Assembly: GCA_965644295.1 (NCBI GenBank)
Contig: CBFFRP010000434.1
Location: forward strand, 146,634-210,633
Length of the DNA stretch: 64,000 nt
Direction of reading: 5' to 3'
DNA from: Paraphysomonas bandaiensis
Taxonomy: Eukaryota; Protista; Chrysophyceae
Positions 4,340-64,000 of this stretch are shown piece by piece. Position 1 is the first letter of the stretch, and the number at the start of each line of letters is the position of its first letter. A model generated the notes under the pieces. The model was not told the origin of the DNA. It ran no database searches and saw only the letters and a list, made by a program, of their open reading frames with translations. Both the position numbers and the translations under genes were made by a program.

Positions 4340-6612
4340 TAATTAGGAGTTTCTGAAGAAGTTTCTTGTGTCTCTGAAAGGCGGACTCTCGCATCTCAGA
4401 GATGGAGGCGTGTGGACAATCACGACACTTATGTTTGAGAGAGTCAAGTCGAAAGCCACAATCAGAGCATCTGGCTTTGTCCAGGTCAAGTCCGAATTTT
4501 GTTTTGCCCTATTCCTGTCATTGCTGTAAGATATGCCATGTCAGGGCTGTATTGAGTATGCGTTGTCTTAGTTGTGAATTCTCCACTGTACTCCACTCTT
4601 CCGTGCCAATCTGGACTGATTGTCAGGCGGTACAGACGCGGACCAAAGAGGCCCTCTCACACAGACGGCGCGCCCTCGGAACAAAGCCCCAGGGAATATT
4701 TTACGAATGCCTCGCCACAGCTCTTAAACAGCGCCCAATAAAATGGACGCGCTCGCACCCCGAACGTAGAACACAAGATCAAAGCAACTGGACCTACAAC
4801 GGCATTTATATAGCTGACGCCGCCGCCAGCGGCGATTGGAAGACACTAGACAGAGTGCTCGGAGCCTCCAACTACAGTGTTGTCACAACTGACGCTACGC
4901 ACATACTGGATGAATTCTTCACCACGGGTCAATGGCACTGGCGAAGATACGATACACACCTCCTCACAGACCTCGGTCCCATGCTAGGAGACGTCACAGA
5001 TCTCCACCACCAGTGGGACCTCCATCAATACACCCTCCGACGAGATAGCATGTATGCTGCACAAACGCAGCGAGACCCGCAGTATTGGACACGCAGCGGA
5101 ACAAGGCTCCCACACAAGCTCCACCCCCTCCGTACCCATAACTCCTCCAAACACTACATCTCCCTCTCGCAGAGCGTATACGCGAGACGGCATACGTATG
5201 GGACAAATCCTTCGCAATGGGAAGAAACCGAGCCAAAGGAAAATCCGGACATGATCGCACAACGGCTTCCACATGCACAGATTGTGCACACCCCACAGAC
5301 AACATGGCGCACATGCTTCTCACCTGCACTCATCCTGACATCATTCATATACGTGAAGATGTCCACCAAGCACACCACAATAAGCTTGACAAACTTCGCA
5401 CACGCACGCTCCCCCATCCCTGGTTTTACACCGCCATAACCAAACTAGCCAAAGCCGCATGGAACCCAACCACCCCCCAGGTTGAGCGCTTACTAGACCG
5501 GCCACATTACTGCCACACAATTGGCCGACGCATTATTCGGACGCCACATATCCAGCTCACTGCTCGAACATCAATTCCACGCCCTAGAAAAATCCATCGC
5601 CTCTATCCTACTCCCCCTATATGATGGAGGGCTCCGCATGCTTCGCAATAGGGGATTCAGACACCACAACGCAGACACGGCACCGGCGACACCGGTCACG
5701 ACACATTCACAGCAACGCCAGTCCCAGGATACTCATCCGACACCAAAAATACTCCAACTACTCCAGGCAACATCCACTCCAAGAACTACACTCTCTGCAA
5801 GAGTCCAGACCCGACAGAGGCAAGCGCAACCACTCCGGAAACAACTCCTCTTTACTTGTGGCCGAAACCCCACCTCAACAACCAGCACCATCTCCACCAC
5901 CGACTTACACTCTCATATACATCTCGCCTCATCCACCCCTCACATAATCCATGGCACAGGCCCGCCAGACACATTGCCCAAAGGTAGACCCCCGACTAAC
6001 CTCAATACAAGGGACGGTTGCACCATGGTGCTCGCAGCGATGCACAAGCAGTCCCGAGACGGTTGCCCGCCACTAGTAGTATTTAGCAAATCTAGTTATT
6101 ACTGTAGTTAGTCTATAGATATAAACTAGTTTCTGTACACAACCGTTCTCATGTAATAATCAGACTTTCCTATATGTCTTAGTCTTAGTTGTGAACTGTT
6201 CTTGATCTTAGATCTGCCGCAGGCAGCCCAGCCATGTCCAGTTTGTGCGGAAGTAAGGCACCGCTACCTTTCCAGTACCCAGGCGCACAATCCAGATTAT
6301 GACCGAAGAGTTGATCACGGAGCGCAGGTAATTCTCTAAAATCTATTGATTGCGAAGAGATTGGAAATAAGTGATCATGGGGTGTGTAAGATACGACCGG
6401 CGTGTTCCGGACAGACGCCAGTGCCATATTCTGGACGTAAGTATACGTTCCATGACTCTGGCAACATCAATTTTACAGAAAGTGTAATTGTTTCGGCCTA
6501 GCATATGGTCAACCTCCAATCATTCATCCCCTGCAACCCCGTCTGCTATGTAGATTACTTTGTCTTCATACGTTCATTGAGATTCATCAGTAGTGCGACG
6601 CTTAGGGTGTGA
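4340..6612 (-). mobile_element. Old degenerate LINE (family B) RNase H/zinc-finger region, split by a younger antisense LINE insertion
   Basis: Minus strand 6612-6196 reads SHPKRRTTDESQ..YEDKVIYIADG..ALRDQLFGHN..PGYWKGSGALLPHKL. It resumes at 4578-4340 with CSDCGFRLDSLKH, collinear with the copy at 45.5-47.4 kb. Confidence 0.75.
4579..6175 (+). mobile_element. 5'-truncated LINE (family A): RNase H C-half, CxxC..H..C finger, PKGRPP end, 3' UTR; 14-bp TSD
   Basis: TSD GTCTTAGTTGTGAA at 4565-4578 and 6182-6195. Highly similar to the minus-strand copy at 25.6-27.5 kb. Frameshifted (ORFs 4402, 5217, 5521). Confidence 0.9.
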
Positions 6613-12814: not shown

Positions 12815-12887
12815 AGGCACTACTGGGATTCGAACCCAGGTCGCAGGAATCAGAACCCTGAGTGATAACCAACTACACTATAGCGCC
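12815..12887 (-). tRNA. tRNA-Gln(CTG), identical second copy
   Basis: Exact reverse complement of 12491-12563. Confidence 0.95.
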
Positions 12888-25642: not shown

Positions 25643-28570
25643 CATATATGAAAGTCTGATTATTACATAAGTACGGTTGCGTACAGAAACTAGTTTATGT
25701 CTATAGACTAGCTAATAACTAGATTTGCTATATACTACTAGTGGCGGGCAACCGTCTCGGGACTGCTTGTGCATCGCTGCGAGCACCATGGTGCAACCGT
25801 CCCTTGTAGTGAGGTTAGTCGGGGGGTCTACCTTTGGGCAATGTGTCTGGCGGGCCTGTGCCATGGATTATGTGGGGGGTGGGTGAGGCGAGTTGTATAT
25901 GAGAGTGCAAGTCGGTGGTGGAGATGGTGCTGGTTGTTGAGGTGGGGTTTCGGCTACAAGTAAGGAGAAGTTGTTTCCGGAGTGGTTGCGCTTGCCTCTG
26001 TCGGGTCTGGGCTCTTGCAGAGAGTGTAGTTCGTGGGGTGGATGTCGCCTGGAGTAGCTGGAGTACTTTTGGTGTCGGGTGGGTATCCTGGGGCTGGCGG
26101 GGCTTTGCGTGTGTCGGGACCGGTGTCGCCGGTGCCGTGTCTACGTTGTGGTGTCTGTGTCCCCTATTGCGAAGCATGCGGAGCCCTCCATCATATAGGG
26201 GGAGTAGGATAGAGGCGATGGATTTTTCTAGGGCGTGGAATTGATGTTCGAGCAGTGAGCTGGATATGTGGCGTCCGAATGCGTCGGCCAATTGTGTGGC
26301 AGTAATGTGGCCGGTCCAGTAGCGCTCAACCTGGGGGGTGGCTGGGTTCCATGCGGCTTTGGTTAGTTTGGTTATGGCGGTGTAAAACCAGGGATGGGGG
26401 AGCGTGCGTGTGCGAAGTTTGTCAAGCTTATTGTGGTGTGCTTGGTGGACATCTTCACATATGTGAATGATGTCAGGGTGAGTGCAGGTGAGAAGCATGT
26501 GCGCCATGTTGTCTGTGGGGTGTGCACAGTCTGCGCATGTGGAAGCCGTTGTGCGATCGTGTCCGGATTTTCCTTTGGCTCGGTTTCTACCCATTGCAAA
26601 GGATTTGTCCCATACGTATGCCGTCTCGCGTATACGCTCTGCGAGGGGGATGTAGTGTTTGGAGGAGTTATGGGTACGGAGGGGATGGAGCTTGTGTGGA
26701 AGCCTTGTTCCGCTGCGTGTCCAATACTGCGGGTCTCGTTGCGTTTGTGCAGCATACATGCTATCTCGTCGGAGGGTGTAGTGATGGAGGTCCCACTGGT
26801 GGTGGAGATCTGTAACGTCTCCTAGCATAGGACCGAGGTCTGTGAGGAGGTGTGTATCGTATCTACGCCAGTGCCATTGACCCGTGGTGAAGAATTCTTC
26901 CAGTATGTGCGTAGCGTCTGTTGTGACAACACTGTAGTTGGAGGCTCCGAGCACTTTGTCTAGTGTCTTCCAGTCGCCGCTGGCGGCGGCGTCAGCTATA
27001 TAAATGCCGTGGTCAGTGTAGGTCCAGTTGCTTTGATCTTGTGTTCTACGTTCGGGGTGCGAACGCGTCCATTGTATTGGGCGCTGTTTAAGAGCTGTGG
27101 TGGCGAGGCATTCGTAAAATATTCCCTGGGTCCAATCACAGCTACAACTGTACAATGATCTTCACGGATGGATCCTTCACACGCACACACCTCACCCCTG
27201 CTCACCTACTCGGCAACACCCACACACAGCCCAATTCTCACGACGGAGGAGCTGCAATTGTATGGCTCCCGCCCAAGAACACCTGGGGTCACAGACAAAC
27301 CAAAATCCTACAACTTACGGCACCACAGTACACAGCGCCTGGCCTCAACGCATACACTTACGAAACCCTTGCAATGTCAGCAGCACTGACATTCTCCAAT
27401 GTACTCCACTCTTCCGTGCCAATCTGGACTGACTGCCAGGCGGTACAGACGCGGACCAAAGAGGCCCTCTCACACAGACGGCGTGCCCTCGGAACAAAGC
27501 ACTTTGTCAATGGTAGCTCGGAATTGTGGCGTAGCTGGGGAGGGAGGTTGTATTCTGATGCCTAGTTGTTGCCCCCATTGTACCAGACTGGTGATGTACG
27601 TGTCAACGTCCTGGGGGGGGTGCTCGTAGCGTTGCAAGAGCGATATGGCCGCACTCTTGGGCTGTCCTCCGAGTGTGAGAGCTCGTTGAAGAGTATGCCA
27701 TTTCTGAGTCTGGGCGTGGGTTGAAAATTTGCGCAGTCCAAGCCCTTTGTATTTCGGGGGAAGGTAGATAAGATCCGTGGGATATCCAGGGGGGAGACGG
27801 AGTATTTTCCTAGCGGCCTGCGCGAGTAGTTTGTCTATGGCGATGTATTTAGCGTATGTCCAGGATGCTTTGGTGGCCTTGTATAGTAGGGTCGGGAGTA
27901 TTTGTGTGTTGAGGACGAGTAGCTTGCAGTCAGGTGTCGCGCATTTGGATCGTAGAACTGCCGTGGATGTGGCTATGTAGGTGGTGCACCAGCTGTGGGA
28001 GTCGGTGTCCTTTACTGAGAATGGAAGTTGTACGCCGAGATACTTGGTGGAATTGGTGGTTGTTCGGATGGGGATGGGGTGTGGGCACCAGTTCCAGTCT
28101 CTTATGATGATGTGTGGGTTTGATTCTAACATGGCCGTCACCGCAAATGGGGCTCCCAGGGCAATGCATTCAGTTTTGGGGATGTTTAGTTGCATTCCGG
28201 AGAAGGCGCAGAAGGATGAGAGTTTGTCGGCCTTGAGCTGAGTGGCCTCAATGGAAGTTGTGATTTGGGAGAGGTCATCTGCGTACGCCTCATCTTGGCT
28301 ATCATCATGTAGGTCAGACCAGCATAGGATCATGTCAAAGATGACGATCCATGCAACTGTGGATTCAGTTCCACCTTGTGTGACCCCTCTCTCCGCGGAG
28401 AATCCCATGTCAGGGTGCTGGATAAAGGAGCCATCTGAGCCAAGCAGTTCTTCGAGTGATCGGGGATCGATGTTGTCGGCCATGTGTGGGGTCCAGATGA
28501 AGGTGCGACCCCCATCGTCGAGGTCGCTTTTAGCCATTTGATTGTGTCATCGGGGACACCAAGTCTTGCT
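25643..28570 (-). mobile_element. 5'-truncated LINE family A: RT, RNase H (internally inverted 27131-27500), zinc finger, PKGRPPD*
   Basis: RT motifs RGVTQGG, AYADDL, QLNIPKT and KYLGV. RNase H motifs IFTDGS, YETLAM and IWTDCQ lie on the opposite strand. CADC..HMLLTC finger. 3' UTR matches 5990-6175. Confidence 0.92.
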
Positions 28571-41879: not shown

Positions 41880-42072
41880 TACGGAAGTGGTTGCACCTTG
41901 GTGCTTGCGGCGACGCACGAGCAGCTTCTGTAGCGTTAAATAGTAGGATAATGGAAATTGAACGGATTAGTTATGGGTAGAGGTCTAGCTAGTATGTCTA
42001 GCATTCAACTAGCCACTATATTGGTACAGGTTTCTAACGCCTATTGCTAATAAATAAAAAGACTTTCAATAT
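41880..42072 (+). mobile_element. LINE/SINE 3' tail fragment
   Basis: ACGGAAGTGGTTGCACCTTGGTGC...GACTTTCAATAT. Confidence 0.8.
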
Positions 42073-48648: not shown

Positions 48649-49380
48649 AAACCTAGAAACAGCGGTTATCGATCTACTTCATCCGCTTTATGCAACAGCG
48701 AAGCTAATGTTACCGGGTCGCGGCCGCCGTTATATCACTGCACACAAAGGACTCCCTAGGCTACCCCCGCGACCGCGTCAGAAACGGAGTCAGCCATGGA
48801 AACGTCCGAGAGTGCTACGTTACTAGGGGTCCACAGAAGACCTGCGACTGTGCCACCTCCCGCCTCACACACAAATCCCACCGACCTAATCCAATTTATC
48901 ACCGTCCAGACCCCACAAAGATGCCGTCTCCGGCAACTTCATCCACTCCCGAGGTCCAAAAAGAGCACAGCATCAGTGCCCATACATTCAACGCCTCCTC
49001 CCACCACTCTCTCTAACTCACAGCCCACCCACCAAGAACTCGGTACACTCAGGAGCTTAATACAAAACCTTGAGCCCCCTCCTAACCCAGTGGAGTCTCA
49101 TCCCAAGGGGAGACCTCCAGATCACACGCGCCGGTGAGTCCCAGGACACACGATCATGACGAGCCTTATAACACACACTAAGAACGGAAGTGGTCGCACC
49201 TTGGTGCTTGCGGCGACGCACAAGCAGCTTCTGTAGCGTTAAATAGTAGGATAAAAGAGTTTGTATTGATTAGTTACCACGGGTAGAGGTCAAAATAGTA
49301 TGTCTAGTATTCTTCTAGCCACCAGCCACTACATTGGTGCAGGTTTTCAACGCCTATTGCTAATAATAAGGCATTCAATA
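48649..49380 (+). mobile_element. 5'-truncated LINE family B end (PKGRPPDHTRR*), inserted in tandem at the 3' end of the previous element
   Basis: CATTCAATATATAACAATTA at 48629-48648 and 49372-49391. Confidence 0.85.
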
Positions 49381-49783
49381 TATAACAATTATAGATTAAA
49401 AGTATTTAAAAGGGATCCAAGCAGTCAGAACTAGATAAGTGCAATGTCCACTACGCATGTATGTATGTCTAAGTTAACGACAATGTAGCGCTCAAGAGAA
49501 ACTAGAGCAATAAATTTTCAATATATCAACGAGTTCATAGATTGGAAATCTGTATCGACACTCTGTATAGGATTAGTTAATTGCTGAAGAATAAATAAGA
49601 AGCTATGGTAATAATAAATAATGGATTTTAAAATAAATTCATGTAATACTATAGTTGAAACAAAAAAGAACATAATATATCGTATCCAAAGAGTAAAATA
49701 TATTGCTCACAGTACAAATCAATGGAATGTAAAAAACTATTAGGAATCATCTGCAGTCTCCAAAGGGATACATCAGACCATAT

Positions 49784-51373: not shown

Positions 51374-54300
51374 ATGCTGCGCTTGCACCGTGCTCTGCGG
51401 GTGACCCAGCGCTCTCTCCTTGCCTCTTCCAATGCACAGTATAGCCCTTACAACTCTATTAGCACCACACACACTACCAGAGAGATGAAGAGATATGGGG
51501 TGCGGGCCTTTGGCGATACTGCTAGACCTCCCAGTCATTCACGCCCCCCTCAAACTAAAGGGCCTCGAAAGACGATTCCCAAACACACACAGGTGGACCC
51601 AACAACTCAGGCTGTAAGAAAAGAACTCGCCGCTCTATCGAATACGTTTATTCGGACCAGAGATGTTGATGATTTGTTTGAACGCTATGCACCAAGCGAT
51701 ATGGATCCAGAGTTGCTTGTGGAGGTTGTCAAGACCTTGTCGACGAATAGGTTTATATTGAAACCTAGGCATGTGAAACATGTATCAGATATGCTACTTA
51801 AAAACGGCCATAAATTAGATCGTTTCAAATTAGGTTAGTAGATCACTAAGATCATGTGTTGTAAAATGTTTATAATTCTTTGTACTGTGTTGCGTGTATT
51901 GTATTGTGCGATATCGTAGAACTGGCGGGTTTCACATGGCGAGTGTATGACCTGGATGCTGTACATTATGTGCTAAGAGTTGTTCGTTTTTATAACAGGA
52001 AGCCTGTTTTATCACACCAGAACTATTCCCCAACTTGAATCTACTGAGCGTTTAGAGATGGATCGACTCTACAAAGTTTTAACACACACACTGTTTGATT
52101 CAAGTGTGAAGCCTCACGGAAGAAGTGCTTCCCACTTGGCAGTAATCATGCATGGGCTGCAAAATGCTACATCATCGACAGTAGTAGATAAGTTACTGAG
52201 AGCGATAACAAACGCGATTAATACCTCCCCACATCTCTGGAAGGGGAAGGATCTAGGCATGGGACTCTATGGGCTGAAAAATATGGAAAACACTGAGGCA
52301 GTGAAAGAACTTTTGTCTGCTTTAATTTCTAAAATGCACCCCTCAGGTCCGTACATGTGGTTCATGTATATGTCTATAGTACGTGTAGTGTGTTATGCGA
52401 GTCAGGGATAGTGTAGTATATAGTGTAGAATACCGCCCTGCCTGCAGTGCATTGGCGGTGTCGTGTAGGGCATGCACTATTCCAGCTTTGTGGCATCTTT
52501 GTACTAATTCTATGCTCATATCAGCTGTTATCGGGGCGGATGATATTGCAAGTGCCTCGATTGGCCTACAACATATGTCTGCCTCTACTGAAGTTTTGGA
52601 TTTGTTCTCCTTGTTCCGAGACCGTCTGTGTGCTACGGAAGTCATTGTCAGCGAAAAGAATATATGTAATATCCTATACAGTCTCCACAGCAAGCAGTGC
52701 TCTGTACCGGAGGTCCGAGTACTACTGCATACCGTAACAGACATATTGAGATCCCCAGCGGGTAGTAAAATGGCCTTCAACTCGCGGGGTGTGTCGTCTA
52801 GTCTTTACGGTCTTCGGAGCATGAAATCTACAACAGAAGAGGTGAGGAATCTGCTAGAAGCTCTTCAGGGTCCTATAACCCGAAATTATGAGCCTTTAAC
52901 AGCGAGATCAATTGGAGATGCACTATATGGACTGCAGGGCATGAGCCCAGAACACCCTGAAGTGGCTAATTTACTATCGTGCTTGACTTCTTCTATCAAA
53001 AATTCGAAAGAAAAACTCTCCGGCAGACATCTTGGAAAAGCTGTGTATGGCCTGAAAAACATGTCCTCCGACTACGCAGTAGTTAGAGAGCTGGTGTACG
53101 CCCTTGCTGACAGAGTCTCTGCCGCTGGGACGAATGAAAGCGCTTGCCCAGAGGGGTTCTGGAGTCAATTGAATGAAGAAGCTCTTGCCGGTGTGATATA
53201 TGGTCTGAGGAACATGAAGAACGATTGTGTAGAAGTCGATGCTCTGTTAGAGGTCATTGCACGTGAGCTACAATCTTGGAAACATTTGATTACTATCTCT
53301 GATAGCAGTTCGAGTATATTATTTGGTCTGCGTAACATGACTCCGACTCCTAGTGTGCGTTTGATACTGAGTAGTTTAGCTGAGATCACTGCAAATACCA
53401 GCACTCCGATCCACATATCGCGCGTAGCTCCAAGTATATATGGACTAATGTCGATGAATGAGTGTGATGAAGTCATGCAAATTTTGGCGGCTTTGGACGA
53501 GAAGTTATGCATGTCTACTGGAACAATTACGAACAGAGATGTTGCCCACATATGTTTTGGATTACAGGGAATGTGTAGTTTAAATGACACTGTTAAATCA
53601 GTGCTGGCTACAACTCTCGACAAAGCTTTGAAAAATAACTTGACCCTGCATGCAATTGACGTGGCCATGGTTATATATGGGCTGAAGTCGCTACCGAAAG
53701 ATTATCTGGAAGTGAAAGATATACTGACGTTATGCTGTAAGAGTTTAAACGAGTGCCAACCAGATGAATTTGATCATAAGCAAATTGCTATGATTCTAGT
53801 TGGGCTGGCTAATTGTAGCTCCAATCTCAAAGTAGTTTCTGAAATTGTTGTGGCTGTTACAAGGATATTGAATCATAACCATATTGTTCTTCCCCCGCAT
53901 GAGCTCTCTACTTGTCTTTTTGGCCTAAAATCAATGACATCTGCACAGCCTGAAGTCAAGGATCTCATAGCGGCTGTGTTGGCAGTGAAGTCTGCAGAAC
54001 CTATGACTCCTGCGGGGGTAGCTCGTGCTTTATGTGGAATGCAAAGCTTGAATTCGCATCACCAGTGTACTAAAGAATTGGCTGTATATTTGGCCTCTCA
54101 GCTGCATACTGTTAGAACTCAAATGACTCCTCATGAGATTGCTATCGCTATGTTTGGGATGAAGAGTTTATCATCAGAACACGCTGAGATCAGACATATT
54201 CTCGGCCTTCTGGGCGAGGCTATACAGTCCACCAAAGAGCATTTTACCAATCAAGAGTTGAGTATCATGTTTGACGGCCTTAGCTCCTCCAATGACCGGT

Positions 54301-55427
54301 CAGAGGAGTCAATGAATGTCCTACAAGGCCTTGCTAATCGGCTGGATCACACTGTTGGTGATTTTACTGCCATTCAACTCACCGATATGTTGCATGGCCT
54401 TCAGGGTTTCAGCTCTCGTTCTGTAGATATTAAGCGTATTCTACGCATTCTAACTCCGGTTATGCAGAAAACCATTCGCGGAAAATTGGATAGCGTGTAT
54501 GTGAACAAGGTACTCTTTGGTCTGCAGCGAATGGACTGCGGAGACGATGACGTTGTCAGCGCTCTTCACGCCCTCGGTGAAGTGGTAGCTTCACCCTCGA
54601 AGGTATCTGGAGGCGGATCGACCGAATGCAATAAACTTTCTCGCTGTTCGAATCATAGTTTTGCCAGTGAAATTGATGCCCTGCGTAAGGGCGTTGTGGG
54701 GCTGACATCTTTGTGTCAAATATATACAGCCACGATATCACCTGTACAAACCGCCGCCACCATGAGGGTTCGCAGTATTAGTGTGCTGTATCACCACATC
54801 ACTACTTTTCTACATAGTGCAAGGGAGGTGACTGGTAGCTACGACGCACGAGTTGTTGAGCTGACAGATATTGAACGAAGGAGTGCGTTGATGACTCTTG
54901 AGGAGACTCTACGGGGGCTACGTCTTCTTTTGCATTATTCACCTAATCTACCAGCGGATTTACTACACGCATTGGATGAAGCACGGCATTCCATTATTTC
55001 TATTCTCCAATCATCCGATAGTTGGAAGCTTGGGGAACAGAACAAAGTGGACGAGCAGGGCGCTATCGGCAGAATGGTGGATATAATAAAAGAGTTGTCT
55101 GGACCACACTTTCAGAATATTGAAGTGACGCGCAATGTCTGTATTGGCGAGGAAGAAGTATCGGGGTATGGTTTTCACCTGCCTGTAGTTGCAACTATGA
55201 GTACACAAGATGCAGAATATAGGGCGGCAGTGCACATTGATGATCGTGATACGTGCACGTACCCTGCCACACGGCGTCTACAATTTTTGAAAGAAAGGTA
55301 CCTCAAGGACGCTCATGGCATCGAGGTTATCCATGTCACTCGTGATGATACTGATGATGACGTCGCCAGGAAAGTGAAGGCAGTAGTTCAGAACTTCGCG
55401 ACGAAATCAGAGATAGCGTATAAGTAG
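51374..55427 (+). CDS. Helical-repeat protein (~40-aa repeats) with C-terminal RAP-like domain; 3 exons
   Basis: Mitochondrial-like presequence MLRLHRALRVTQRSLL; repeats such as LYGLQGMSPEHPEVANLL; C-terminus AVHIDD..TRRLQFLKERYLKDAHGIEVIHV. Confidence 0.78.
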
Positions 55428-55899
55428 ATAGTACATATAATACCATAGTGATAGAGTAGGAAGCAAGTTAGATGGGTATGGCTGTGGCAGGGCATGAAAA
55501 TTTAAAGTGTTGAAAAACCAGCAATATACATAATATAACTAGATTTTATAAAAAAGCTTCAAAGTGTACTGTTTCGCGAGTGGACGGTGCGTTGGGCTCA
55601 CCTATCGCACACTATTCACTTTAGTTGTACAATATATATATATATATCACATCTTACAACACCTTACATTCACCCATTCTACAATTTGGTAATTTCATCT
55701 GCTGTTGCGCACAGCTAGCGCTTTTCAAAAGCACAGTGTAGATCGTATAACCTATAGTACAGCGAAACGTAACACTGTAGGGCATATGATTCGAATTAAG
55801 CCGTGTAATATATATAAGGAACTCAAGATCTTTCTCTGCCCTACGGTGGCAAATACCGTTCAACACAAAGTTTCACCTTATTAACCAGCTTTAAGCTCA

Positions 55900-58440
55900 A
55901 TGTCCCTATTAAGGGTATGGATGAGTCATGTCAGTGTGCCTAGGGCCTCTTCTCCCTCTCTTCGGCCACATTTTGCTGATCACCTCGTCTCCGACAAATC
56001 TCTTGTTTTACCACGTTGTACATGTTCCAAGCCTCACTGCCTGGCTTTGCGACTTCCACCCAACCTAACGGCTTCGGCTAAACCACGTGCCTGCACTAAT
56101 GCAGCGCTTACCGCATTCATATGCCATCACATCAATAGACATCATAGTCTCACCTATCGAATTCTACGGTTACAACCACTCAAAACGTGGCTCGTGCGAG
56201 CAGGTCCACGCAAAAGATCCTCTGGTGCTCTCCATATGGTCACAGAATACTCTCGAACCCTCACAACTGAGCTACAGGGCTGCCTCCTGATGTCCACACA
56301 AAACAACCCAACATGGTTTGTCTGTGGTCTATGCATCCAGCAGGTTACCCCCTCATTCTGTTCACCTATCACTCCCTCAGCCCATTCCTCTTATTGGACA
56401 GACACTGTATTCCGCATACGGTATATTCGGCTACTGTACTACAGTGCCCTACAGGATGTATACCACACAAAAACGGTGCTAGCATGCGGTACACCACGTA
56501 GCCCCGGACCCCATCAATACCCTACCAACACACACCCACTCAATCTTGCTGGTTATGAGTATATCACCTATGCAAGGCCCCAAAGTTCACGCTTAAGTCT
56601 CTTGCGTAACAACACTCGGTTCACATACAGATATACACCAACACCCTTTAGAAGCAACTTCGACACAATTTCAATGAAACGTGAAACAAATTCCAACACT
56701 TCCAGAACCTTCACCCCGAAGTTTGTTCTTCCCCCCTCCTATCAACCAACCAACATTGATGCGCAGATCAATAATGCTATCAGAGAACAGAAGAAAGCCA
56801 AAGCTGACACTCCCCAGCTACAGCTCCCATCGGTACGCACCTTTCTGGGATGGGAAAATGACCTACCTGTGGGAGAGTACAAAACACTCGTCCTTACAAA
56901 CATAAAAGCTGCTGATGATGCCACCTTCCTGGGGATAACACACTACCTTATCCATGAGTTGGGGTTTCCCATTCAACCCCCTACCCCCCAAGACATCGCT
57001 ACCTTCAGGGCAGCCAAGGATGCACGAACGTGTTCAGACTTACCCGCTCCCACAGCGAGTAGGGTAGTCCGAGCGTTCGACCTAGGCAGACCTGGGTACG
57101 AAGTCCGACAGGGCATGGGAGCGAATGTTACCGCTGACTCATGTATGTACTCCTCCCCTCTATGCTTTGACCTCCATGTAGAAACGGGCACATCAGTCGA
57201 TGACAAAGGCCTCCTTCGGACCGAACGCCGACATGTCCAGATATCACTTTTCCGAACGCCACGAGAACTCTTCGTGGGTCGCACCAAGGATGAGCCCTCG
57301 CTGATACCAGTGGCGGCTATATATGGGCTACATGCAGACTCAGCGCACACCAGACCTGCACATGCCTTTAGGTTACGAAACACGCTGGATATGCTTCTCC
57401 GAACGGGAGGTTTCCCCACGCCACCTCTATACGAAGTATTCTGGACTCTAACACACTATAGAGGCAAGACTCGAGCCACTGATAAAACATATAGGTTCTA
57501 TCAGATTCTATTACTCCACGATCCCATTCACGATCAGGATCTAAGAGCTAAATTCTATAAAGCACTCTTCAATAATGAAATAGGAGGACATGTCGAAATC
57601 AACCTCGGCTCACTCTGTTGTAGAATGGTCAGCACTGAAACACCCACGCAAAAGCAGTCCAACTGGACACCGTCTCAAGAACTCTTCCGCATCGCCGTCT
57701 GCTCTGAAACACTCCTATCTCCCATCCAAGTCTGGCAAGCCTGTGAGGCCATAGGTATCCCATCCACGGACATAGAGGACATCATTTGGACCGCCCGCAA
57801 CCCACTCACAAGCGGGCGCAAAGAAAAAGAACGCTTAGTTGAACAAACCTACATTTACCTTGACGACAGGAATACCAAGATCAAACTCTGTTGGGAAATC
57901 TCACGCACAGGTATCGTGCCTTTACTGCGCAAAGCTCTGGGTGACGAAACTCTAAGGCTCCTCTATCACACCATAGCAGTCCCCCCTGGCCTCCCTACTC
58001 AGCGGTTTCTATACGGCCTCCATAAGGCCCCAGACACAGCAACAAACGCCCCTCCCATAATACCGCCTCCAACGTCCCTTCAACCCTTCGGTCCAACTGT
58101 TGCTCCACAAATGCAGACCGATACACCGCGATCGTACACTCCCAAACGACAGCGACAGATGGACACATCCCCATCAACAGAGCCAGCACCAGCTCCCACC
58201 TGCCCAGAGCTCTGCGAAATAGCTCTACACATCGCTTCAGATCTTGTACCTCTGTCAAAAATCCATGCCATCCTCGCGCAAATGGAAAACGCGGTTGCAG
58301 CTCTCTATGAGATCGATGCTGGGGCGACTCTCACGGTACTTGATTACTATAAAAACAAGGTAGATCACAGTATCCCAGAAAGGTCCTCAGAAGAACACTC
58401 TCGGGTGGACTCGGACATCTTCGGCTCCGACTCCAACTGA
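55900..58440 (+). CDS. ORF1 of the giant LINE (true start may be ATG 56674); no recognised domain
   Basis: 846-codon intronless ORF upstream of ORF2. Confidence 0.65.
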   Translation: MSLLRVWMSHVSVPRASSPSLRPHFADHLVSDKSLVLPRCTCSKPHCLALRLPPNLTASAKPRACTNAALTAFICHHINRHHSLTYRILRLQPLKTWLVRAGPRKRSSGALHMVTEYSRTLTTELQGCLLMSTQNNPTWFVCGLCIQQVTPSFCSPITPSAHSSYWTDTVFRIRYIRLLYYSALQDVYHTKTVLACGTPRSPGPHQYPTNTHPLNLAGYEYITYARPQSSRLSLLRNNTRFTYRYTPTPFRSNFDTISMKRETNSNTSRTFTPKFVLPPSYQPTNIDAQINNAIREQKKAKADTPQLQLPSVRTFLGWENDLPVGEYKTLVLTNIKAADDATFLGITHYLIHELGFPIQPPTPQDIATFRAAKDARTCSDLPAPTASRVVRAFDLGRPGYEVRQGMGANVTADSCMYSSPLCFDLHVETGTSVDDKGLLRTERRHVQISLFRTPRELFVGRTKDEPSLIPVAAIYGLHADSAHTRPAHAFRLRNTLDMLLRTGGFPTPPLYEVFWTLTHYRGKTRATDKTYRFYQILLLHDPIHDQDLRAKFYKALFNNEIGGHVEINLGSLCCRMVSTETPTQKQSNWTPSQELFRIAVCSETLLSPIQVWQACEAIGIPSTDIEDIIWTARNPLTSGRKEKERLVEQTYIYLDDRNTKIKLCWEISRTGIVPLLRKALGDETLRLLYHTIAVPPGLPTQRFLYGLHKAPDTATNAPPIIPPPTSLQPFGPTVAPQMQTDTPRSYTPKRQRQMDTSPSTEPAPAPTCPELCEIALHIASDLVPLSKIHAILAQMENAVAALYEIDAGATLTVLDYYKNKVDHSIPERSSEEHSRVDSDIFGSDSN

Positions 58441-59251
58441 CTCCTACTGGACTGGGACACAACGAACATCAAACGTACACTCATAGAAGTGTCCGCAGCT
58501 GCTCACACGTGGTTATCCCCCAGTCCACACTTACATATCCATAGTTGGCCCTCACCTGACACAACGACCTTCGCCTGTAGCACCCACATGCGTCCACCAC
58601 GTAAACCGCCAGACAAACAGTCGAGATCCACCAGTGTACATCCCACGAAAAGGCACCAAGGACCGCACTTTTCCTGTGATAATAGTGGTGATGGACCACG
58701 AAAACGGCCGGCCTCGACACAACGTAAGCGAAACAACCTCCGGCGGCTCAGTCGCAAACGAACTCTGCAACAATTTCGTGAAGGAACAATCCAGTCCCTC
58801 CCTCCACACATACAACGTCAACAGACACGAAACAAGCTCCGCATCCGTGCCCACAACAAGCAAGCATGGCGAGAGCATTTACAACACCTGGCACAACAGT
58901 GTGTAGACACACACAACATCGTGACCACTCCTATACCTGACACAGCACCCACAGCTGTTACAGCACCCCCCGTCCAGAAGACTCCACACATACTATTTGC
59001 CTCCCTCCGCCCACAGTGGAGGACGAACAAGAGAGAACAATCACTGACACAAGTGTACTGCCTCAACTATTTGTGCCGCACCCTCTGCCAGCTGCCTTCA
59101 CGGACCCCGGACTGCAGAATTGGTCCTTCTACTCGCCCAGCGGTCTGTTAGCCATTGCCATACACGAAGAGGTGGTTCACAGTGTCATGTCCATGCTACA
59201 ATCGAGGCACGCTTTAGAACGCATAGAACAGCACCTCAGATGTTCGCTTGA

Positions 59252-62200
59252 GGAGGGAAAATGCTGGTTGCACGTCACTACACACACACAGAGTACAACA
59301 ACACACCAATGGAGGGCTTCTGCGGACTAGCTGCTATTGCCGCAATATACCACAAACAACCGGAGGAGGACCACTACCCGTATTTAAATCCCGATGATCC
59401 AGCCTCGAAAGCAAAACTGCTCCAAGTCATTCAGACAAGCAGGACGGTACTTAGTACCTACACGCTCGCTGAAGCCAAGATGCTTAACTTTGCATGCATC
59501 CGGAAGAAGCTCCGACAGCAGCTAACAACGTACAACAAAGCACTACGCCGCAAACGACCAACTGCTGTCGGAATACCCCCAGAGCAATGGGGCTACACAG
59601 ACATCATAGCCCTCCTGGCAGAAACCCTGAGTATACGAATTCGTATCTGGCAAGATTCACCAGTGGACCTTGGCCACAACTGGGCGTACTGGTCTACCCA
59701 CCATTCCTCCTTCCTTCCACAAACTCAATTCCTTCCATCTTATGATGTGTTTTGCTCCAACGACCACTTCTTCCTGGACACCAAATACCCGGTGGAGTTG
59801 GAACTACACGCGCTACTCGAGAGAATTCCTGACCTCGTCATCATGCGTCTCCAAAATGTGTTGCAATATCATTCCAAGGGAATGCAAGGAGTCCATCGTG
59901 CCAGGTCCATCAACCATCCCTCCCACGCCCTTCAGGGGAAGGAATTCTCTTCCGATAACAGCGGTGACGGACCCAGCAAATCCACCCACACATTACCCTT
60001 ACCCACTAAGGATGCCACCACACCGTATGCAACTCTATTTGACTATTTCCCAGTCAAACGGAGGCCACCTACCACCAACCCTACTCAACTGAACACCATG
60101 GGAACTCCAGCATTAGCCCCAGACGGCCCATCCTCACACTCCACTACCACTCCTGACATCAGGCCGGATGCACTGCCCAAGGACATTGCCACACACCCCC
60201 GACACTACACAGAGGGCTGGGGTCACACGCCCTTTCACTCCGATCTGCTGAACAACTGGGTTAGATATGATGAAACCCAAACCATTGCTGCCTCCCCACA
60301 GGGAAACCTTTTAAAAGAAATATATGCACACATGCTATCCCCTGCCTGTACAGACATATGGGAAGGATTCATAGCCAAGGCTTCCAGGACGGACAACTAT
60401 GATCTCATGATATCATTCACGCTACCAGAGCACAAATTGGATACCACGCACAGCGCCCTACTAGTTGCCCAGCATCTCGCGAATGGCAACAAACCCTGGG
60501 CAGACTCCACTCATGTTGTATCTAGGCATGTGCGGACCCTTTGCCTGACAAAGGGTATTCCCTCAACAGCCACTGTTAGTCTCCGTAAGACACTCATGCA
60601 ATATGAATCCTCGACTCCACACACAGGACTACATCTAGACACGGAGGATTTCCAACTGCTACTCGATCTTCTCTCCATACCATACAGACTATGGGACGCT
60701 GTTCAACCGCACCTGGCGCCTGGTTGGGCACAGCTGTCACCATTCTCCAGACAGGCACTAACAGTGCACGCTTCTACCAACACTGTGGTAACCCATGACA
60801 TCATACGCAGCCAGCATGGGTTTCACATACTCAATGCAACAAATATCCCCACCTGCATCATGCACGCTCTAACACGGACTCAGGAGCGGCTATCCTGTTT
60901 TCTACAACACCAGACCTCCAGACAGAGCACCAACATCCTCTGGACTTCTGAGCCGTCAACTGTACCACCTATGCTACATGAGCACAGAGAGCAACAGGAA
61001 CAGAGGGAAGTAATTGCAGTCTCCTTGTCACCGAGAGCTCGACGTCAACTACGACAGATGAACCCCACGGACCGTCGACAACTCAGGCTCCATATGTGCG
61101 ACATGAGCAGAGTCTACCGCCTCACCCTCAGACCCTCAGCCCTTCGCACACAACAACATATCCCTAGTGATGGGTACTGCGCATACAGCACACTCTATCA
61201 TCTGCACATTCTTGCTTCAAGCAGGCGACACACTCGCTCCTGTCTGAAATTAGACCTCAAACAACGCAAGGACCGTCACACGCTAGCATCTTTCATAAAT
61301 ACATTAGGCACCCAAGCGTTCGACATAATGCAACGGGAGTGCATGGCCCATCACACACTTCAGCCACTACGACATAAGTTAGATCACGCACAGGCCGCAC
61401 TTTTAATACCTACCAAAACAACATACACTACGGAAGACGACATAACTCACTGGCTCTCAGTGCGAGAGGTCCACCTTTTAGCCTCTACTATCAACCCCTG
61501 CACGACGTGGGCGCAAAATGGTAATTACCTCAGCATTGTAGGCATCCCTACTGACAAAGTAGCTTATAACATCGCATGGAAGGTGGACGAACTTAGGGAC
61601 GCTATTCGTGATAACTACTACCATGTCATACTACAAGATGCTCACTACTTCCTCTTAGACCCTGCCGGTCTTTCTACTGCCCTAGACAACGCCTTACTAT
61701 CTCTTGAAAACACCTTGGCCACCAGTATACTCTCAACGGCTGACCCCATCGCTCCACCTACACTTCCCGCGGACTCAATCACGAACAACAATAGGACATC
61801 AAAGATGACCAGCACCAGAACAACCTCGTCAAGCAGCACCAAGTTAGCACGAACAAATCGACAGATTCTGCAGGCTTCAACCCCTGGAGCACTACCATCG
61901 AACAAGAAGATGCAGTTGAAACACGCCCAAACTGCGTTGACAAGTCGATGCCAGCCAACCCGGAAAGCCAAAAAGGTCGTAAATTACGATGAAAGTGACC
62001 AACCAACGAACCTTCACAACTCACACCCAACCACGACCACACGAACGATCAGACCAACTCCAGCACTAGATACCACCGGCTGGGACAGGGACTGGTCAAG
62101 AAAGTTCTACATTGCGTACGCCGATAACACTGCCAAAGGACTATCCCTTTATGCGAAGAACACATTCCCAGCAGACGTCATCATTGCTGAGTACAAAGGC

Positions 62201-64000
62201 AAACGCTATCCACTAACAAAGATGAGTCAGTCTACAAGGCGTTCTGATTACATAGTTCAAGACAGTACTGGTACCTTCGCAATAGATGGCTTTGACCAAG
62301 TCCGACAATGTGTAACATGCGAAGCTGGGTATATTAATGACCCCCTAGCCACAAACATGGCTAATGTCAAGTTTGTCACGAAAAATAAACGCCTCTATGT
62401 CCGTACAATACGCTCCATTGCTAAGGATGAAGAACTTCTCATCAACTACGGACATCATTATTGGTGTGATCAACGCTGGCCACTTGGGATATTAATCCAA
62501 GCCAGGGCTGCGTACGACAGCGACATAGGCGGTGCCAATATAGCAGTATGGGACAGACTCCTTGCAGACAAGAGTGGAACTCCTACAGAGACCTCCAGCA
62601 GCATCCCCAAGGATCCCTCGGGAGCAGCCATGGGACTCCGACTCTCCACATGGAACACAAATGGCAATCCGGCATCACACACAGGTAAAGCCCAAGCTAT
62701 CATCCGACACTTTAAGCGGCAAAAATTGGACGTGCTCCTATTACAGGATGTCCGTCTAACAGAAACTCAGGCCAACTTCTTCACGCGTATCATCGAAGAT
62801 GCACTCCAGGGAACAAGAATATGCCTCTTCCTCAGCAAGCAGCCAAAACTGACTTCAAGAGACCCACTAATGGGGGGTACAGTAGTCATAATCAGCGAAT
62901 ACTGGAAGCGCCGTCTCGCCTTCACAAAGGCTGACTTTACGGGACTTGGTTTAGTGAGCCGACTAGAGTTCAAAACGTCGGTGGCGCACACCCTAGTACT
63001 AATAAGCGTCTATCTACCCCCGAAGCCATCCACGCCAGGCACTTGCACATTATGGAGCAAATTGACCAAGCTAGGGAGAGCGTCCCGTGGTATCTGTACT
63101 GCTGACCCCTACAAGCTCCTATGCAACATCCTTACGAAATGGGTCACTAAAGCCAGAGCCAAGGACCATACTGTCATTGTCGCCGGCGACTTCAATGGCT
63201 CCATGGAGACAAATCCTAAAGGCAGAGACATACGACAACTTGCCGACAAACTCCAACTGGCTGCACCACTCCATGAGCTTCTCCTACCCAGGAAAACATA
63301 TCATACCTTCCACAGATTAGACAAAGGAATATCGCGGATCGATCATATTCTACACACGCCGTTACCTCCGAACATGTCTGTTACGGACACTGGCTGCCTT
63401 GACTCCCCCTCATTACTCGCAGCAGCCTTCGATCATCGACCGGTCTGGGTCGGTTTCACCGTACCAGTCAATCTTGACCCTCGACCACCGGAGTCGCACC
63501 TCCGAATCCCCCCCCGTCTCAATGTAAACCCGAAGGACTCCAAGGAAGTACAGGCATACACCGCAAGACTCCTCCAACTTCATGCACAACTACCACATTT
63601 AGACAACGGATCGACTGCCATACTCCCTCCTGAGGTGGCAGCCAACAGACTAGCGGCCATCCATCACATAACCCTCCAGGCTTCGCTTGAGGCGAAGCGT
63701 CCTGCATGTACACATAGCACACGCCTACACGAACGTTGTCAGCGCACACGCTCAAAGTTCAAGAATGGCTTTTCCCCGGAAATGAGAGTAATACAGGAAG
63801 GAATGCTCATGGTTTTGCGGATTATCCAAAAGATGTTCAATTCTGCTGGATACAAACGGCATGGATGGCGCGGCCCCCCGGCAACCACCCCCACCCACGA
63901 AATCATCACTGCATGGTTCGCCCGATGGGACTCCTATCTCCAGGAGTTCTCAGGGTCACATCAAAGGCATATCGGACATCAACTTCTGGTGCAGCCACCG
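59252..64000 (+). CDS. ORF2 polyprotein (partial): OTU-like, degenerate OTU-like, OTU-like, SET, APE endonuclease
   Basis: Hand translation of frame +2 finds no stop in 1583 codons. OTU1: TPMEGFCGLAAIA..QWGYTDIIALLAETLSIRIRIW..NDHFF. OTU3: IPSDGYCAYSTL..HWLSVREVHLLA..QDAHYF. SET: KGLSLYAK..IIAEYKG..AGYIND..EELLINYGHHYW. APE: STWNTNG, LLLQD, SVYLPP, AGDFN, SRIDHI, FDHRPV. Confidence 0.9.

What the first reader, a model, noticed from the sequence alone, without database searches (positions are those of the whole stretch)
59252..64000. Giant LINE polyprotein carrying tandem OTU-like proteases and a SET domain fused upstream of its endonuclease
Seen: a stop-free 1583-codon frame missing from the ORF track. 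Its order is OTU-like (~59291-59780), degenerate OTU-like (~60280-60840), OTU-like (~61157-61660), a S/T-rich linker, SET (~62102-62464) and APE (~62630-63460). Known: APE normally opens LINE ORF2, and some non-LTR clades carry one cysteine protease (Ulp1 in NeSL, Josephin-like in Dualen). I know of no OTU x3 + SET + APE arrangement. Inference: the element delivers deubiquitinase and lysine-methyltransferase activities with its RNP, to edit chromatin at insertion sites, block silencing or degradation, or process itself.
Basis: partly seen in the sequence, partly recalled or inferred. Interest (0 to 1): 0.92.

Follow-up and report, generated by a model that had tools for sequence, protein, structure and literature searches.

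The report
Giant protist LINE carrying SET domain
This is the front 8 kb of a very large jumping gene (a LINE retrotransposon) of a marine-type protist. Ahead of its DNA-cutting and copying enzymes, its protein carries a histone-methyltransferase-like SET domain and three protease-like modules; elements of this general design have been described before, so this is a variant and not a first.

Summary
The stop-free frame at 59252-64000 is real. Pfam confirms SET (62138-62452) and an AP-endonuclease domain (62648-63361). A 98.4%-identical metagenome copy (L003) continues past the window end and carries SET, APE and RT in one frame. Two more distant relatives (L001, L002) also have RT downstream.

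The element starts near 55832, so at least 8.2 kb lies in the window. It is multi-copy. Two truncated copies of a sister family sit in the same window, one with a 13-bp target-site duplication and a 5' inversion. It is therefore a LINE, not a host gene.

The three upstream modules are real and conserved. Module 3 is as conserved between families as SET and APE. Modules 1 and 3 share a Cys...His motif pair. The "OTU" label passed no test: no Pfam or PDB match, AlphaFold models of low confidence, and Foldseek results at noise level. OTU, Josephin or another cysteine protease/DUB are all still possible.

The architecture class is already published. Cryptophyte Dualen-1_GCr has SET + C48 peptidase + APE + RT + RNH + CCHC + RLE. 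Dualens with Josephin domains and an ORF2p with an N-terminal OTU are also reported.

This copy looks damaged, with a frameshift at 63940. Verdict: a new variant of a known kind. The proposed function is untested.

The parts
55832..64000 (+). 5' part (at least 8.2 kb) of one copy of a giant non-LTR retrotransposon ('family A'), cut by the window end
   Evidence: The C-rich composition block begins around 56 kb. Similarity to an independent, internally deleted relative (L005) starts at about 55832, and the left flanks differ. Copy L003 is 98.4% identical over 61305-64000 and runs on into RT.
55900..58440 (+). ORF1-like reading frame (846 aa) with no recognisable domain; the first ~215 aa are low-complexity and may be 5' UTR
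   Evidence: ORF list. No Pfam hit. The frame (nt mod 3 = 1) is open from 55885 to 59148 except for a single TGA at 58438. The start is shared with P0137/L005.
58489..59151 (+). Continuation of the ORF1 frame after the single TGA; it carries copy 1 of the conserved motif (F-S-C-D-N-S-G-D-G-P, the D at 58678) followed by a basic stretch
   Evidence: In sister family B the same motif and basic stretch lie in the same ORF as the modules, SET and APE (P0002; z 6.5, 0 of 300 shuffles).
59261..63939 (+). ORF2 polyprotein in the family's conserved frame (first ATG to the frameshift)
59288..59776 (+). Module 1: cysteine-protease-like module with a Cys motif (P-M-E-G-F-C, Cys codon 59321-59323) and a His motif (N-D-H-F-F, His codon 59765-59767)
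   Evidence: It aligns to P0002 aa 279-431 at 25% identity and in family alignments A3 and A6. No Pfam or PDB hit. The AF2 model has pLDDT 42.
59945..59974 (+). Copy 2 of the conserved motif F-S-S-D-N-S-G-D-G-P, between modules 1 and 2
   Evidence: The same motif occurs in families A and B, in P0012, and in the distant relative L004/P0069. It is not a 2A (NPGP) site.
60230..60847 (+). Module 2: a degenerate copy of the module-1 type with the Cys motif lost; its family-B equivalent keeps Cys and His
   Evidence: 28% identity to P0002 aa 208-437. Alignment A3. P0005 is 54% identical over aa 416-623.
61100..61720 (+). Module 3: the best-conserved module, with Cys motif P-S-D-G-Y-C (Cys 61178-61180), central T-Y-T-T-x-D-D-I-x-H-W-L-S-V-R-E, and His motif A-H-Y-F (His 61643-61645)
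   Evidence: 45% identity between families A and B, against 47% for SET and 51% for APE. Alignment A2. hhalign against the module-1 type is collinear with both motifs in register (single-comparison E = P = 0.025, probability 2%). AF2 pLDDT 51. Foldseek results are at noise level.
61721..62065 (+). Ser/Thr-rich, poorly conserved linker
   Evidence: 28% identity between families A and B; sequence
62066..62545 (+). SET domain (Pfam core 62138-62452) with a conserved C-terminal extension. It keeps E-Y-K-G and E-E-L-L-I-N-Y (putative catalytic Tyr) but has I-N-D where canonical SET has N-H.
   Evidence: Pfam. Alignment with 50+ database relatives that share C-x-A-G-Y-I-N-D-P-L and the Y-W...W-P-L tail. 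Motif positions.
62627..63460 (+). AP-endonuclease (Exo_endo_phos) domain with motifs W-N-T-N-G, L-L-Q-D (Asp where most APE have Glu), G-D-F-N, S-R-I-D-H and F-D-H-R-P
   Evidence: Pfam core 62648-63361. Motifs. Invariant columns across families.
63461..63939 (+). Conserved region between APE and RT
   Evidence: 67% identity to P0001 and 37% to P0002. In L003 it continues in frame into RVT_1.
63940..63940 (+). Extra C relative to copy L003: a frameshift that takes this copy out of the conserved frame before RT
   Evidence: the only indel in 2696 aligned nt. The consensus of P0001 and P0002 follows L003's frame.
4579..6182 (+). Truncated copy B1 of sister LINE family B (3' end only). Its first ~110 nt are inverted. 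It is flanked by the 13-bp direct repeat TCTTAGTTGTGAA at 4566-4578 and 6183-6195.
   Evidence: (2 matches in the window against 0 expected)
25643..28569 (-). Truncated copy B2 of family B: part of RT, a variable region, a C-terminal ORF with a C-x2-C-x9-H-x4-C motif, and the 3' UTR. There is no poly(A).
   Evidence: 99.3-99.5% identical to the 3' half of L001. RVT_1. Translation. 3' ends compared.

Best explanation
The window holds the 5' 8.2 kb of a young but probably already damaged copy of a giant APE-type non-LTR retrotransposon. The host is a SAR-type protist, not human.

Its polyprotein reads, in order: three related Cys/His modules (modules 1 and 3 keep the motif pair; module 2 has lost its Cys), an S/T-rich linker, a SET domain of a transposon-associated subfamily, an AP endonuclease, and then, just past the window end, a reverse transcriptase.

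Shown: the domain order; RT downstream in frame in a near-identical copy; multiple copies; conservation of the module + SET block across families about 40-50% identical in protein; and target-primed-type insertion signatures (target-site duplication, 5' truncation and inversion) in sister-family copies in the same window.

Inferred: the element moves by target-primed reverse transcription. The SET domain methylates a lysine on a chromatin or element protein. The modules are clan-CA-type cysteine proteases or deubiquitinases. They may cut the polyprotein, possibly at the recurrent G-D-G-P motif that precedes modules 1 and 2 (and family B's module), and/or strip ubiquitin-like modifiers. This would match the Ulp1, Josephin and OTU domains reported in other LINEs.

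By architecture it belongs with the accessory-domain Dualen-like LINEs (SET + cysteine protease + APE + RT).
For: - Frame and domains.
- RT in frame: L003 is 98.4% identical, and its 989-aa product has SET-C + Exo_endo_phos + RVT_1. RVT_1 lies downstream in L001 and L002. YADD is present in family B RT.
- Mobility: L005 shares the 5' end from about 55832 but has a different flank and an internal deletion. Family B copies show a 13-bp TSD and a 5' inversion.
- SET followed by APE in at least 6 lineages: window, P0001, P0002, P0007, P0009, P0015/P0138, P0069.
- Module conservation: module 3 is 45% identical between families A and B, against 47% for SET, 51% for APE and 22-28% for linkers.
- Cys and His motifs are shared and in register between module types. 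P0024 has a module with P-P-D-G-L-C...N-D-H-Y upstream of SET.
- The same SET subfamily is paired with Ulp1/C48 proteases in P0050, P0099 and P0118.
- APE and SET signature residues are kept.
- Literature precedent: PMC5029228, PMC9977147, PMC8557442, PMC13405545.
Against: - No profile, PDB or fold evidence shows that the modules are proteases at all.
- The Foldseek lists are noise: OTU DUBs appear 6 times in the PDB top 50 for module 3, but PD-(D/E)xK nucleases appear more often.
- SET has N-D in place of the canonical N-H, so activity is not assured.
- APE has Asp where the catalytic Glu usually sits.
- The restriction-like endonuclease that defines Dualen was not found in family B's complete C-terminus. 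The focal element's C-terminus lies outside the window.
- This copy has a frameshift at 63940 and an in-frame TGA at 58438, so it may not be autonomous.
- The ratio of 17 synonymous to 25 non-synonymous changes against L003 shows at most mild constraint since the two copies split.
Confidence: 0.75

Rival explanations
1. The three upstream modules are not cysteine proteases. They could be a different kind of domain (nucleic-acid-binding, scaffold, or a PD-(D/E)xK-like nuclease fold), and the Cys and His are structural or coincidental. The element would still be a SET-APE-RT LINE.
For: Every profile and fold test for OTU, Josephin or any peptidase came back empty. In the noise-level Foldseek lists for module 3, PD-(D/E)xK nucleases (HincII, Hjc, VRR-NUC, YqaJ, Cas4) outnumber OTU entries. 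The most conserved stretch of module 3 is the central T-Y-T-T-x-D-D-I-x-H-W-L-S-V-R-E, not the Cys or His loops. Module 2 and P0015 lack the Cys.
Against: The Cys...His order, the spacing of about 150 aa and the local motifs (D-G-x-C; H-[YF]-[FY]) recur in two module types and in P0024. Related LINEs and the same SET subfamily are repeatedly paired with genuine cysteine proteases: Ulp1 and Josephin or OTU (PMC9977147, PMC13405545). The predicted secondary-structure order (strand, Cys, helical lobe, strands, His at a strand start) fits clan-CA DUBs (low confidence).
Confidence: 0.3
2. The locus is a host gene, or a domesticated fusion of SET with an endonuclease, and not a mobile element.
For: It is a long intact frame. 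No second family-A copy lies within the window.
Against: RT follows in frame in a 98.4% identical copy. Separate contigs carry copies with other flanks and an internal deletion. Sister-family copies in the same window are 5'-truncated and have a TSD. This copy carries a frameshift.
Confidence: 0.02
3. It is a Helentron-type rolling-circle transposon. That group is also known to carry an APE domain, OTU-like protease ORFs and, in a Phytophthora proto-Helentron, a SET ORF.
For: The same three accessory domain types are reported for Helentrons (PMC4067079).
Against: No Rep or helicase was detected. Here APE is N-terminal to an RT in one frame. The TSD and 5' truncation of sister copies are hallmarks of target-primed reverse transcription.
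Confidence: 0.02
4. The accessory block is a recent passenger, a captured host SET or protease fragment with no role in the element's life cycle.
For: TEs do capture host fragments. SET has the non-canonical N-D motif.
Against: The block is kept in order across families 40-50% identical and in more distant lineages. Its conservation equals that of APE. SET signature residues are invariant across families.
Confidence: 0.07

Closest known systems
Dualen-1_GCr (cryptophyte Geminigera cryophila; Repbase; Lescot et al. 2016, PMC5029228), Dualen/RandI group
   Same: It is a giant single-polyprotein LINE with a SET methyltransferase and a cysteine peptidase upstream of APE and RT. It comes from a marine protist. 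A CCHC motif follows RT in the sister family here.
   Different: The protease there is C48/Ulp1, which Pfam recognises; here there are three tandem modules of an unrecognised Cys/His type. RNase H and the restriction-like endonuclease that define Dualen were not demonstrated here. No sequence comparison with Dualen-1_GCr was possible, and the RT phylogeny was not done.
Chlamydomonas and Haematococcus Dualen LINEs with a Josephin-related cysteine protease/DUB (PMC9977147, PMC8557442, PMC13405545)
   Same: They are APE-type LINEs that carry a clan-CA DUB-like cysteine protease. Josephin has the same Cys-then-His order and similar local motifs.
   Different: No SET is reported for them. Pfam Josephin does not hit the modules here. 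RLE is not shown here.
[quoted passage not shown]
   Same: It has a DUB-type domain N-terminal to a LINE ORF2p. The best named matches to this window's DRC7 host gene are also labelled Symbiodinium.
   Different: It gets only a one-line mention. No SET or tandem modules are reported, and I could not compare sequences.
NeSL/Utopia LINEs with an N-terminal Ulp1 protease (PMC4640811)
   Same: They have a cysteine protease N-terminal in a non-LTR polyprotein.
   Different: They are RLE-type, not APE-type. They have one protease and no SET.
Helentrons and the proto-Helentron (PMC4067079); Ginger1 transposons (PMC2836005)
   Same: They are TE-borne OTU-like proteases, an APE domain and (in the proto-Helentron) a SET ORF. 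The literature proposes the same ideas of self-processing or chromatin/ubiquitin signalling.
   Different: They are DNA transposons (Rep/helicase or integrase-type transposase) and have no RT.
Canonical L1-type LINE ORF2 (APE-RT-CCHC)
   Same: APE is N-terminal to RT. Sister-family copies show TSDs, 5' truncation and a twin-priming-like 5' inversion.
   Different: About 1100 aa of accessory domains lie ahead of APE. There is no poly(A) tail in the sister family. RT finds R2, not L1 ORF2p, as its best (weak) PDB match.

Membership tests
APE-type non-LTR retrotransposon (LINE) | AP-endonuclease domain N-terminal to a reverse transcriptase in one polyprotein | tested here: met
   Exo_endo_phos in the window. 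In the 98.4%-identical copy L003, Exo_endo_phos and RVT_1 lie in one 989-aa product.
APE-type non-LTR retrotransposon (LINE) | Multiple dispersed copies with 5' truncation and target-site duplications | tested here: met
   Shown for sister family B in the window: B1 has a 13-bp TSD and a 5' inversion, and B2 is truncated. For the focal family there are copies on other contigs with a different flank. The focal copy's own TSD cannot be tested because its 3' end is outside the window.
APE-type non-LTR retrotransposon (LINE) | RT catalytic YxDD motif | tested here: met
   Y-A-D-D is present in family B RT. For family A the available RT piece (L003) stops before this motif.
Dualen/RandI group | Both APE and a C-terminal restriction-like (PD-(D/E)xK) endonuclease | tested here: inconclusive
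   APE is present. Family B's complete C-terminal ORF (window 27155-25815, minus strand) has a C-x2-C-x9-H-x4-C motif but no Pfam or PDB match and no clear PD...(D/E)xK. The focal element's C-terminus is not in the window.
Dualen/RandI group | RNase H between RT and the CCHC/RLE region | tested here: inconclusive
   Only a motif-level resemblance to the end of RNase H was seen (W-T-R-S-H-P-E...I-A-D-A-A-A). No Pfam hit.
Dualen/RandI group | RT groups with Dualen in a phylogeny | not tested
The only pointer is that the best (weak) PDB matches are R2 RTs at E 0.005-0.03, and not L1 ORF2p.
OTU deubiquitinase (Pfam PF02338) | Significant match to the OTU profile or to solved OTU sequences | tested here: not met
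   No Pfam hit at E<=10 for any module of families A and B, P0024 or P0015. No PDB hit by phmmer or by profiles A2, A3 and A6.
OTU deubiquitinase (Pfam PF02338) | Cys loop (D-G-x-C) about 110-175 aa ahead of a His loop (H-[YF]) | tested here: met
   Motif level only. Module 3 has S-D-G-Y-C...A-H-Y-F (155 aa apart). Module 1 has E-G-F-C...D-H-F-F (148 aa). P0024 has P-D-G-L-C...D-H-Y. The same pattern also fits Josephin.
OTU deubiquitinase (Pfam PF02338) | OTU fold | tested here: inconclusive
   The AF2 models have pLDDT 51 and 42. The best Foldseek E-values are 0.2-0.6, and OTU entries (6w9r, 3c0r, 6dx2, 6ks5) are mixed with many nuclease folds.
Josephin (MJD) cysteine protease | Match to the Josephin profile | tested here: not met
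   No Pfam hit of any kind on the modules.
SET-domain lysine methyltransferase (PF00856) | Profile match above the curated threshold | tested here: met
   35.8 bits against a cut-off of 22.4, full-length match 1-105/105.
SET-domain lysine methyltransferase (PF00856) | Catalytic Tyr in the E-L-x-x-x-Y motif and the E-Y-x-G motif | tested here: met
   E-E-L-L-I-N-Y and E-Y-K-G are present and invariant across families.
SET-domain lysine methyltransferase (PF00856) | N-H-S/C cofactor-site motif | tested here: not met
   It reads I-N-D-P-L here and in about 50 database relatives. Whether activity is kept is unknown.
Exo_endo_phos / APE endonuclease (PF03372) | Profile match above threshold and catalytic motif set | tested here: met
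   39.9 bits against 24.5. Motifs W-N-x-N-G, G-D-F-N, S-R-I-D-H and F-D-H are present. The usual Q-E-T Glu is Asp (L-Q-D-V) in all families.

The most novel reading that the evidence does not exclude
The modules may be a previously unrecognised family of clan-CA cysteine proteases or DUBs. The element would then belong to a wide, largely uncatalogued clade of protist LINEs built on a transposon-specific SET subfamily (the N-D variant). In this clade the partner protease has been swapped repeatedly (Ulp1, Josephin, OTU-like, or this new type). The same SET has also spread to Ty3/Gypsy elements (P0132). That pattern would point to transposon-encoded editing of host chromatin and ubiquitin or SUMO marks as a counter-silencing strategy.
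Probability: 0.3. Interest if true: 0.7.

Novelty: new variant of a known kind. Interest (0 to 1): 0.45.

Why it matters
Transposons that carry their own chromatin writer (SET) and ubiquitin- or SUMO-type proteases are candidates for actively resisting host silencing or degradation.

This locus, its sister family in the same window, and at least five environmental lineages show that SET-APE-RT LINEs are diverse in marine-type protists. They also show that the protease partner is modular.

That gives a concrete system for a simple experiment: express the modules and SET, mutate the Cys and the Tyr, and assay. The question is whether a LINE edits host marks or merely processes its own giant polyprotein.

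The result also corrects the record. The architecture class is not new (Dualen-1_GCr, 2016), and the 'OTU' label should not be carried into annotation without a fold-level test.

Tried and rejected
1. Pfam scans of each module from the window, P0002, P0024, P0015 and P0069 at E<=10 gave no peptidase family.
2. PDB sequence and profile searches with single modules and with alignments A2, A3 and A6 gave only a spurious lectin repeat match.
3. AlphaFold2 on 4-sequence alignments of modules 3 and 1 gave pLDDT 51 and 42, too poor to use. All three Foldseek searches found nothing significant. I first read the six OTU entries in the PDB top 50 as a hint. I dropped that when PD-(D/E)xK nucleases proved even more frequent in the same noise.
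4. The exhaustive representative search and a profile search with A6 found no further module homologues, so the alignments could not be deepened.
5. Two metagenome-contig scans (A1, A7) returned nothing confirmable.
6. BLAST self-comparison found no similarity among the three modules. Only profile-level comparison did.
7. I suspected that module 1's N-terminal part lies in a third frame (59016-59330), which would imply two more frameshifts. The alignment scores were no better than shuffles (z -0.5 and 1.7), so I dropped the idea.
8. A 2A-like (NPGP) reading of the G-D-G-P motif was rejected. There is no NPGP in any sense-strand frame of 55801-64000.
9. Ulp1/C48 identity for module 3 (because of its H-W-L motif) was rejected. 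No downstream Cys exists and there is no Pfam C48 hit.
10. RNase H and RLE in family B's C-terminus got no Pfam or PDB support.
11. Host identity could only be narrowed to a SAR-type protist.

Broken frames were translated piece by piece.

Full report
**Observation**

The + strand frame from 59252 to the window end has 1583 codons and no stop. A TGA sits at 59249-59251 and the first ATG at 59261. The ORF is missing from the ORF list only because that tool omits ORFs that run off the source.

- SET, aa 963-1067, nt 62138-62452, E 1.1e-8, above the gathering score.
- Exo_endo_phos, aa 1133-1370, nt 62648-63361, E 5.3e-10.

The C-rich sense-strand composition of the element starts near 56 kb.

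**Is it a LINE?**

The word-indexed protein search found two relatives that also carry SET + Exo_endo_phos: P0001 (68% identity) and P0002 (42%). Their contigs carry RVT_1 just downstream.

The exhaustive search found fragments 96% identical to the window. One lies on contig L003. L003 is 98.4% identical to window 61305-64000, with one indel, and extends 1247 nt further. Its 989-aa product has the end of SET, Exo_endo_phos and RVT_1 in one frame. So RT does follow in frame in the family.

The window copy has an extra C at 63940. This shifts its last ~20 codons out of the frame shared by L003, P0001 and P0002. This copy is therefore probably defective. Against L003 there are 42 substitutions, 17 synonymous and 25 non-synonymous.

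**Extent and mobility**

Contig L005 (protein P0137) shares the element's 5' end from about window 55832 but has a different left flank. It jumps by internal deletion into module 1. The element thus begins about 55832, so at least 8.2 kb lies in the window.

Upstream of ORF2, one frame is open from 55885 to 59148 except for a single TGA at 58438. It contains an 846-aa ORF1-like product with no recognisable domain.

The 3' half of L001 (the family of P0002, 'family B') matches two other places in the window:
- 25904-28569 on the minus strand, at 99.3-99.5% identity.
- 4578-5911 on the plus strand, at 95.5% identity.

Comparing the two in-window copies defines a shared 3' end without poly(A). 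Copy B1 (4579-6182) has its first ~110 nt inverted. It is flanked by the 13-bp direct repeat TCTTAGTTGTGAA (2 matches in the window, 0 expected). These are signatures of target-primed reverse transcription. No second family-A copy is in the window.

**The upstream modules**

They are real. P0002 aa 535-766 aligns to window module 3. P0002 aa 279-431 aligns to both module 1 and module 2. Three further fragments (P0005, P0006, P0012; 46-54% identity) cover module 2 into module 3, module 3, and the module 1-2 junction.

Between families A and B, identity by region is as follows:

| Region | Identity A vs B |
|---|---|
| Module 3 | 45% |
| SET | 47% |
| APE | 51% |
| Linkers | 22-28% |

Modules 1 and 3 share a motif pair about 150 aa apart: P-x-x-G-[FY]-C, then H-[FY]-[FY]. 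Module 2 has lost the Cys in family A, but its family-B equivalent keeps it. A profile-profile comparison of the two module types is collinear over 160 columns with both motifs in register, but it is weak (single-comparison E = P = 0.025, probability 2%). P0024 carries one such module (P-P-D-G-L-C...N-D-H-Y) directly upstream of a SET.

**Is it OTU?**

Every test I could run failed or was inconclusive:
- No Pfam family at E<=10.
- Nothing in PDB by sequence or profile.
- No further homologues to deepen the alignments.
- AlphaFold2 pLDDT of 51 and 42.
- Foldseek results only at E of about 0.2 or worse, in which a few OTU DUBs sit among more numerous PD-(D/E)xK nucleases.

The motif pair fits OTU (D-G-x-C; H-Y) and fits Josephin equally well. 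I therefore treat 'clan-CA-type cysteine protease/DUB' as the most likely reading, at roughly 0.55-0.6, and OTU specifically at about 0.3. These figures are my estimates, not tool outputs.

**A conserved short motif**

The motif H-P-x(5-6)-G-x-x-[FY]-[ST]-[SC]-D-[NDE]-[SI]-G-D-G-P occurs twice in the window, with the D at 58678 and at 59954. It also occurs once each in family B, in P0012 and in the distant relative L004. In families A and B it lies upstream of a module. It is not a 2A site. A processing site is a reasonable but untested guess.

**SET and APE details**

The SET keeps E-Y-K-G and E-E-L-L-I-N-Y but reads I-N-D where canonical SETs have N-H. About 50 database relatives share this and a Y-W...W-P-L...A-Y tail.

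Kin of this SET subfamily include:
- proteins in which the SET is followed by this family's APE: P0007, P0009, P0015/P0138, P0069;
- proteins with several Ulp1/C48 domains plus SET: P0050, P0099, P0118;
- a Ty3/Gypsy pol with a C-terminal SET: P0132.

APE keeps its motif set. An Asp replaces the usual Glu in all families.

**Clade**

Family B RT has Y-A-D-D. Its best, weak PDB matches are R2 RTs and not L1 ORF2p. Family B's C-terminal ORF has a C-x2-C-x9-H-x4-C motif and a possible RNase H end, but no Pfam or PDB support and no clear restriction-like endonuclease. Dualen membership is therefore open.

**Literature**

- Lescot et al. 2016 (PMC5029228) describe Dualen-1_GCr from a cryptophyte, deposited in Repbase. 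It encodes a 5287-aa protein with SET, C48 peptidase, APE, RT, RNase H, CCHC and RLE.
- Dualens of Chlamydomonas carry a Josephin-related cysteine protease, proposed to disrupt protein degradation (PMC9977147, PMC8557442).
- A survey lists SET-TE fusions (10.1101/2021.11.30.470311).
- Helentrons carry APE, OTU-like proteases and, in one case, SET (PMC4067079).
- Ginger1 carries OTU or Ulp1 (PMC2836005). NeSL and Utopia carry Ulp1 (PMC4640811).

I found no paper describing tandem modules of this kind with SET ahead of APE.

**Host**

The window also holds the following:
- a Copia element;
- DRC7 and CEP76-like genes;
- a DEAD-box helicase;
- a sulfotransferase;
- two tRNA-Gln genes.

DRC7's best named matches are two short-contig proteins labelled Symbiodinium microadriaticum (75-79%), followed by ochrophyte and oomycete proteins (38-50%). 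This is a SAR-type protist.

**Verdict**

This is a real and interesting element. The LINE reading and the SET-APE fusion are solid. The 'OTU x3' label is unproven. The architecture class is already known. I rate it a new variant of a known kind, with interest 0.45.

Noticed in passing
window 4566-6195 (+): Sister-family LINE copy B1 is 5'-truncated, and its first ~110 nt are inverted relative to copy B2, as in twin priming. It is flanked by an exact 13-bp direct repeat (TCTTAGTTGTGAA at 4566-4578 and 6183-6195). There is no poly(A) at the 3' end.
   Followed up: yes
window 25643-28569 (-): A second truncated family-B copy is 99.3-99.5% identical to metagenome contig L001 (ENA ERZ27288152). 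The organism, or a very close relative, is therefore present in that sample.
   Followed up: partly
window 58678-58698 and 59954-59974; L001 about 692; L004 about 1156: A short motif (...F-S-[SC]-D-[NDE]-[SI]-G-D-G-P, preceded by H-P) is conserved across very divergent relatives and, in families A and B, lies upstream of a module. It may be a polyprotein processing site. It is not a 2A (NPGP) signal.
   Followed up: partly
proteins P0050 (locus L006), P0099 (L007), P0118: Environmental proteins pair several Ulp1/C48 protease domains with the same N-D-type SET subfamily. They may be N-terminal parts of cryptophyte-type Dualens.
   Followed up: partly
protein P0132: A Ty3/Gypsy pol (RT, RNase H, integrase) carries a C-terminal SET of the same subfamily, in the position where chromoviruses carry a chromodomain.
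   Followed up: no
window 22349-23093: A near-perfect (ATGT)n microsatellite of about 187 units. It shows up as three overlapping 'ORFs' in all three frames.
   Followed up: yes
window 12491-12563 (+) and 12815-12887 (-): Two tRNA-Gln(CTG) genes with equal Rfam scores lie in inverted orientation, about 250 bp apart.
   Followed up: no
window 34142-38659 (-): An intact-looking 1505-aa Copia-type gag-pol ORF (zinc knuckle, integrase-associated domains, RVT_2).
   Followed up: no
window 52395-55427 (+): A 1010-aa ORF immediately upstream of the element. It is built of ~37-aa repeats with a recurring Y-G-L-[RK]-x-M motif (heptatricopeptide/FAST-like in appearance) and has no Pfam hit.
   Followed up: no
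window 18437-18682, 18950-19140, 41881-42079, 47065-47393, 49036-49389 and others: A dispersed repeat family matches the 3' part of contig L005 (1301-1644) at 73-89% identity. It is unrelated to the LINE's coding part and may be a SINE-like or other short TE.
   Followed up: no
window 23179-25605 (+): An 808-aa ORF with no Pfam hit lies between the microsatellite and the 3' end of LINE copy B2. Its nature is unknown.
   Followed up: no
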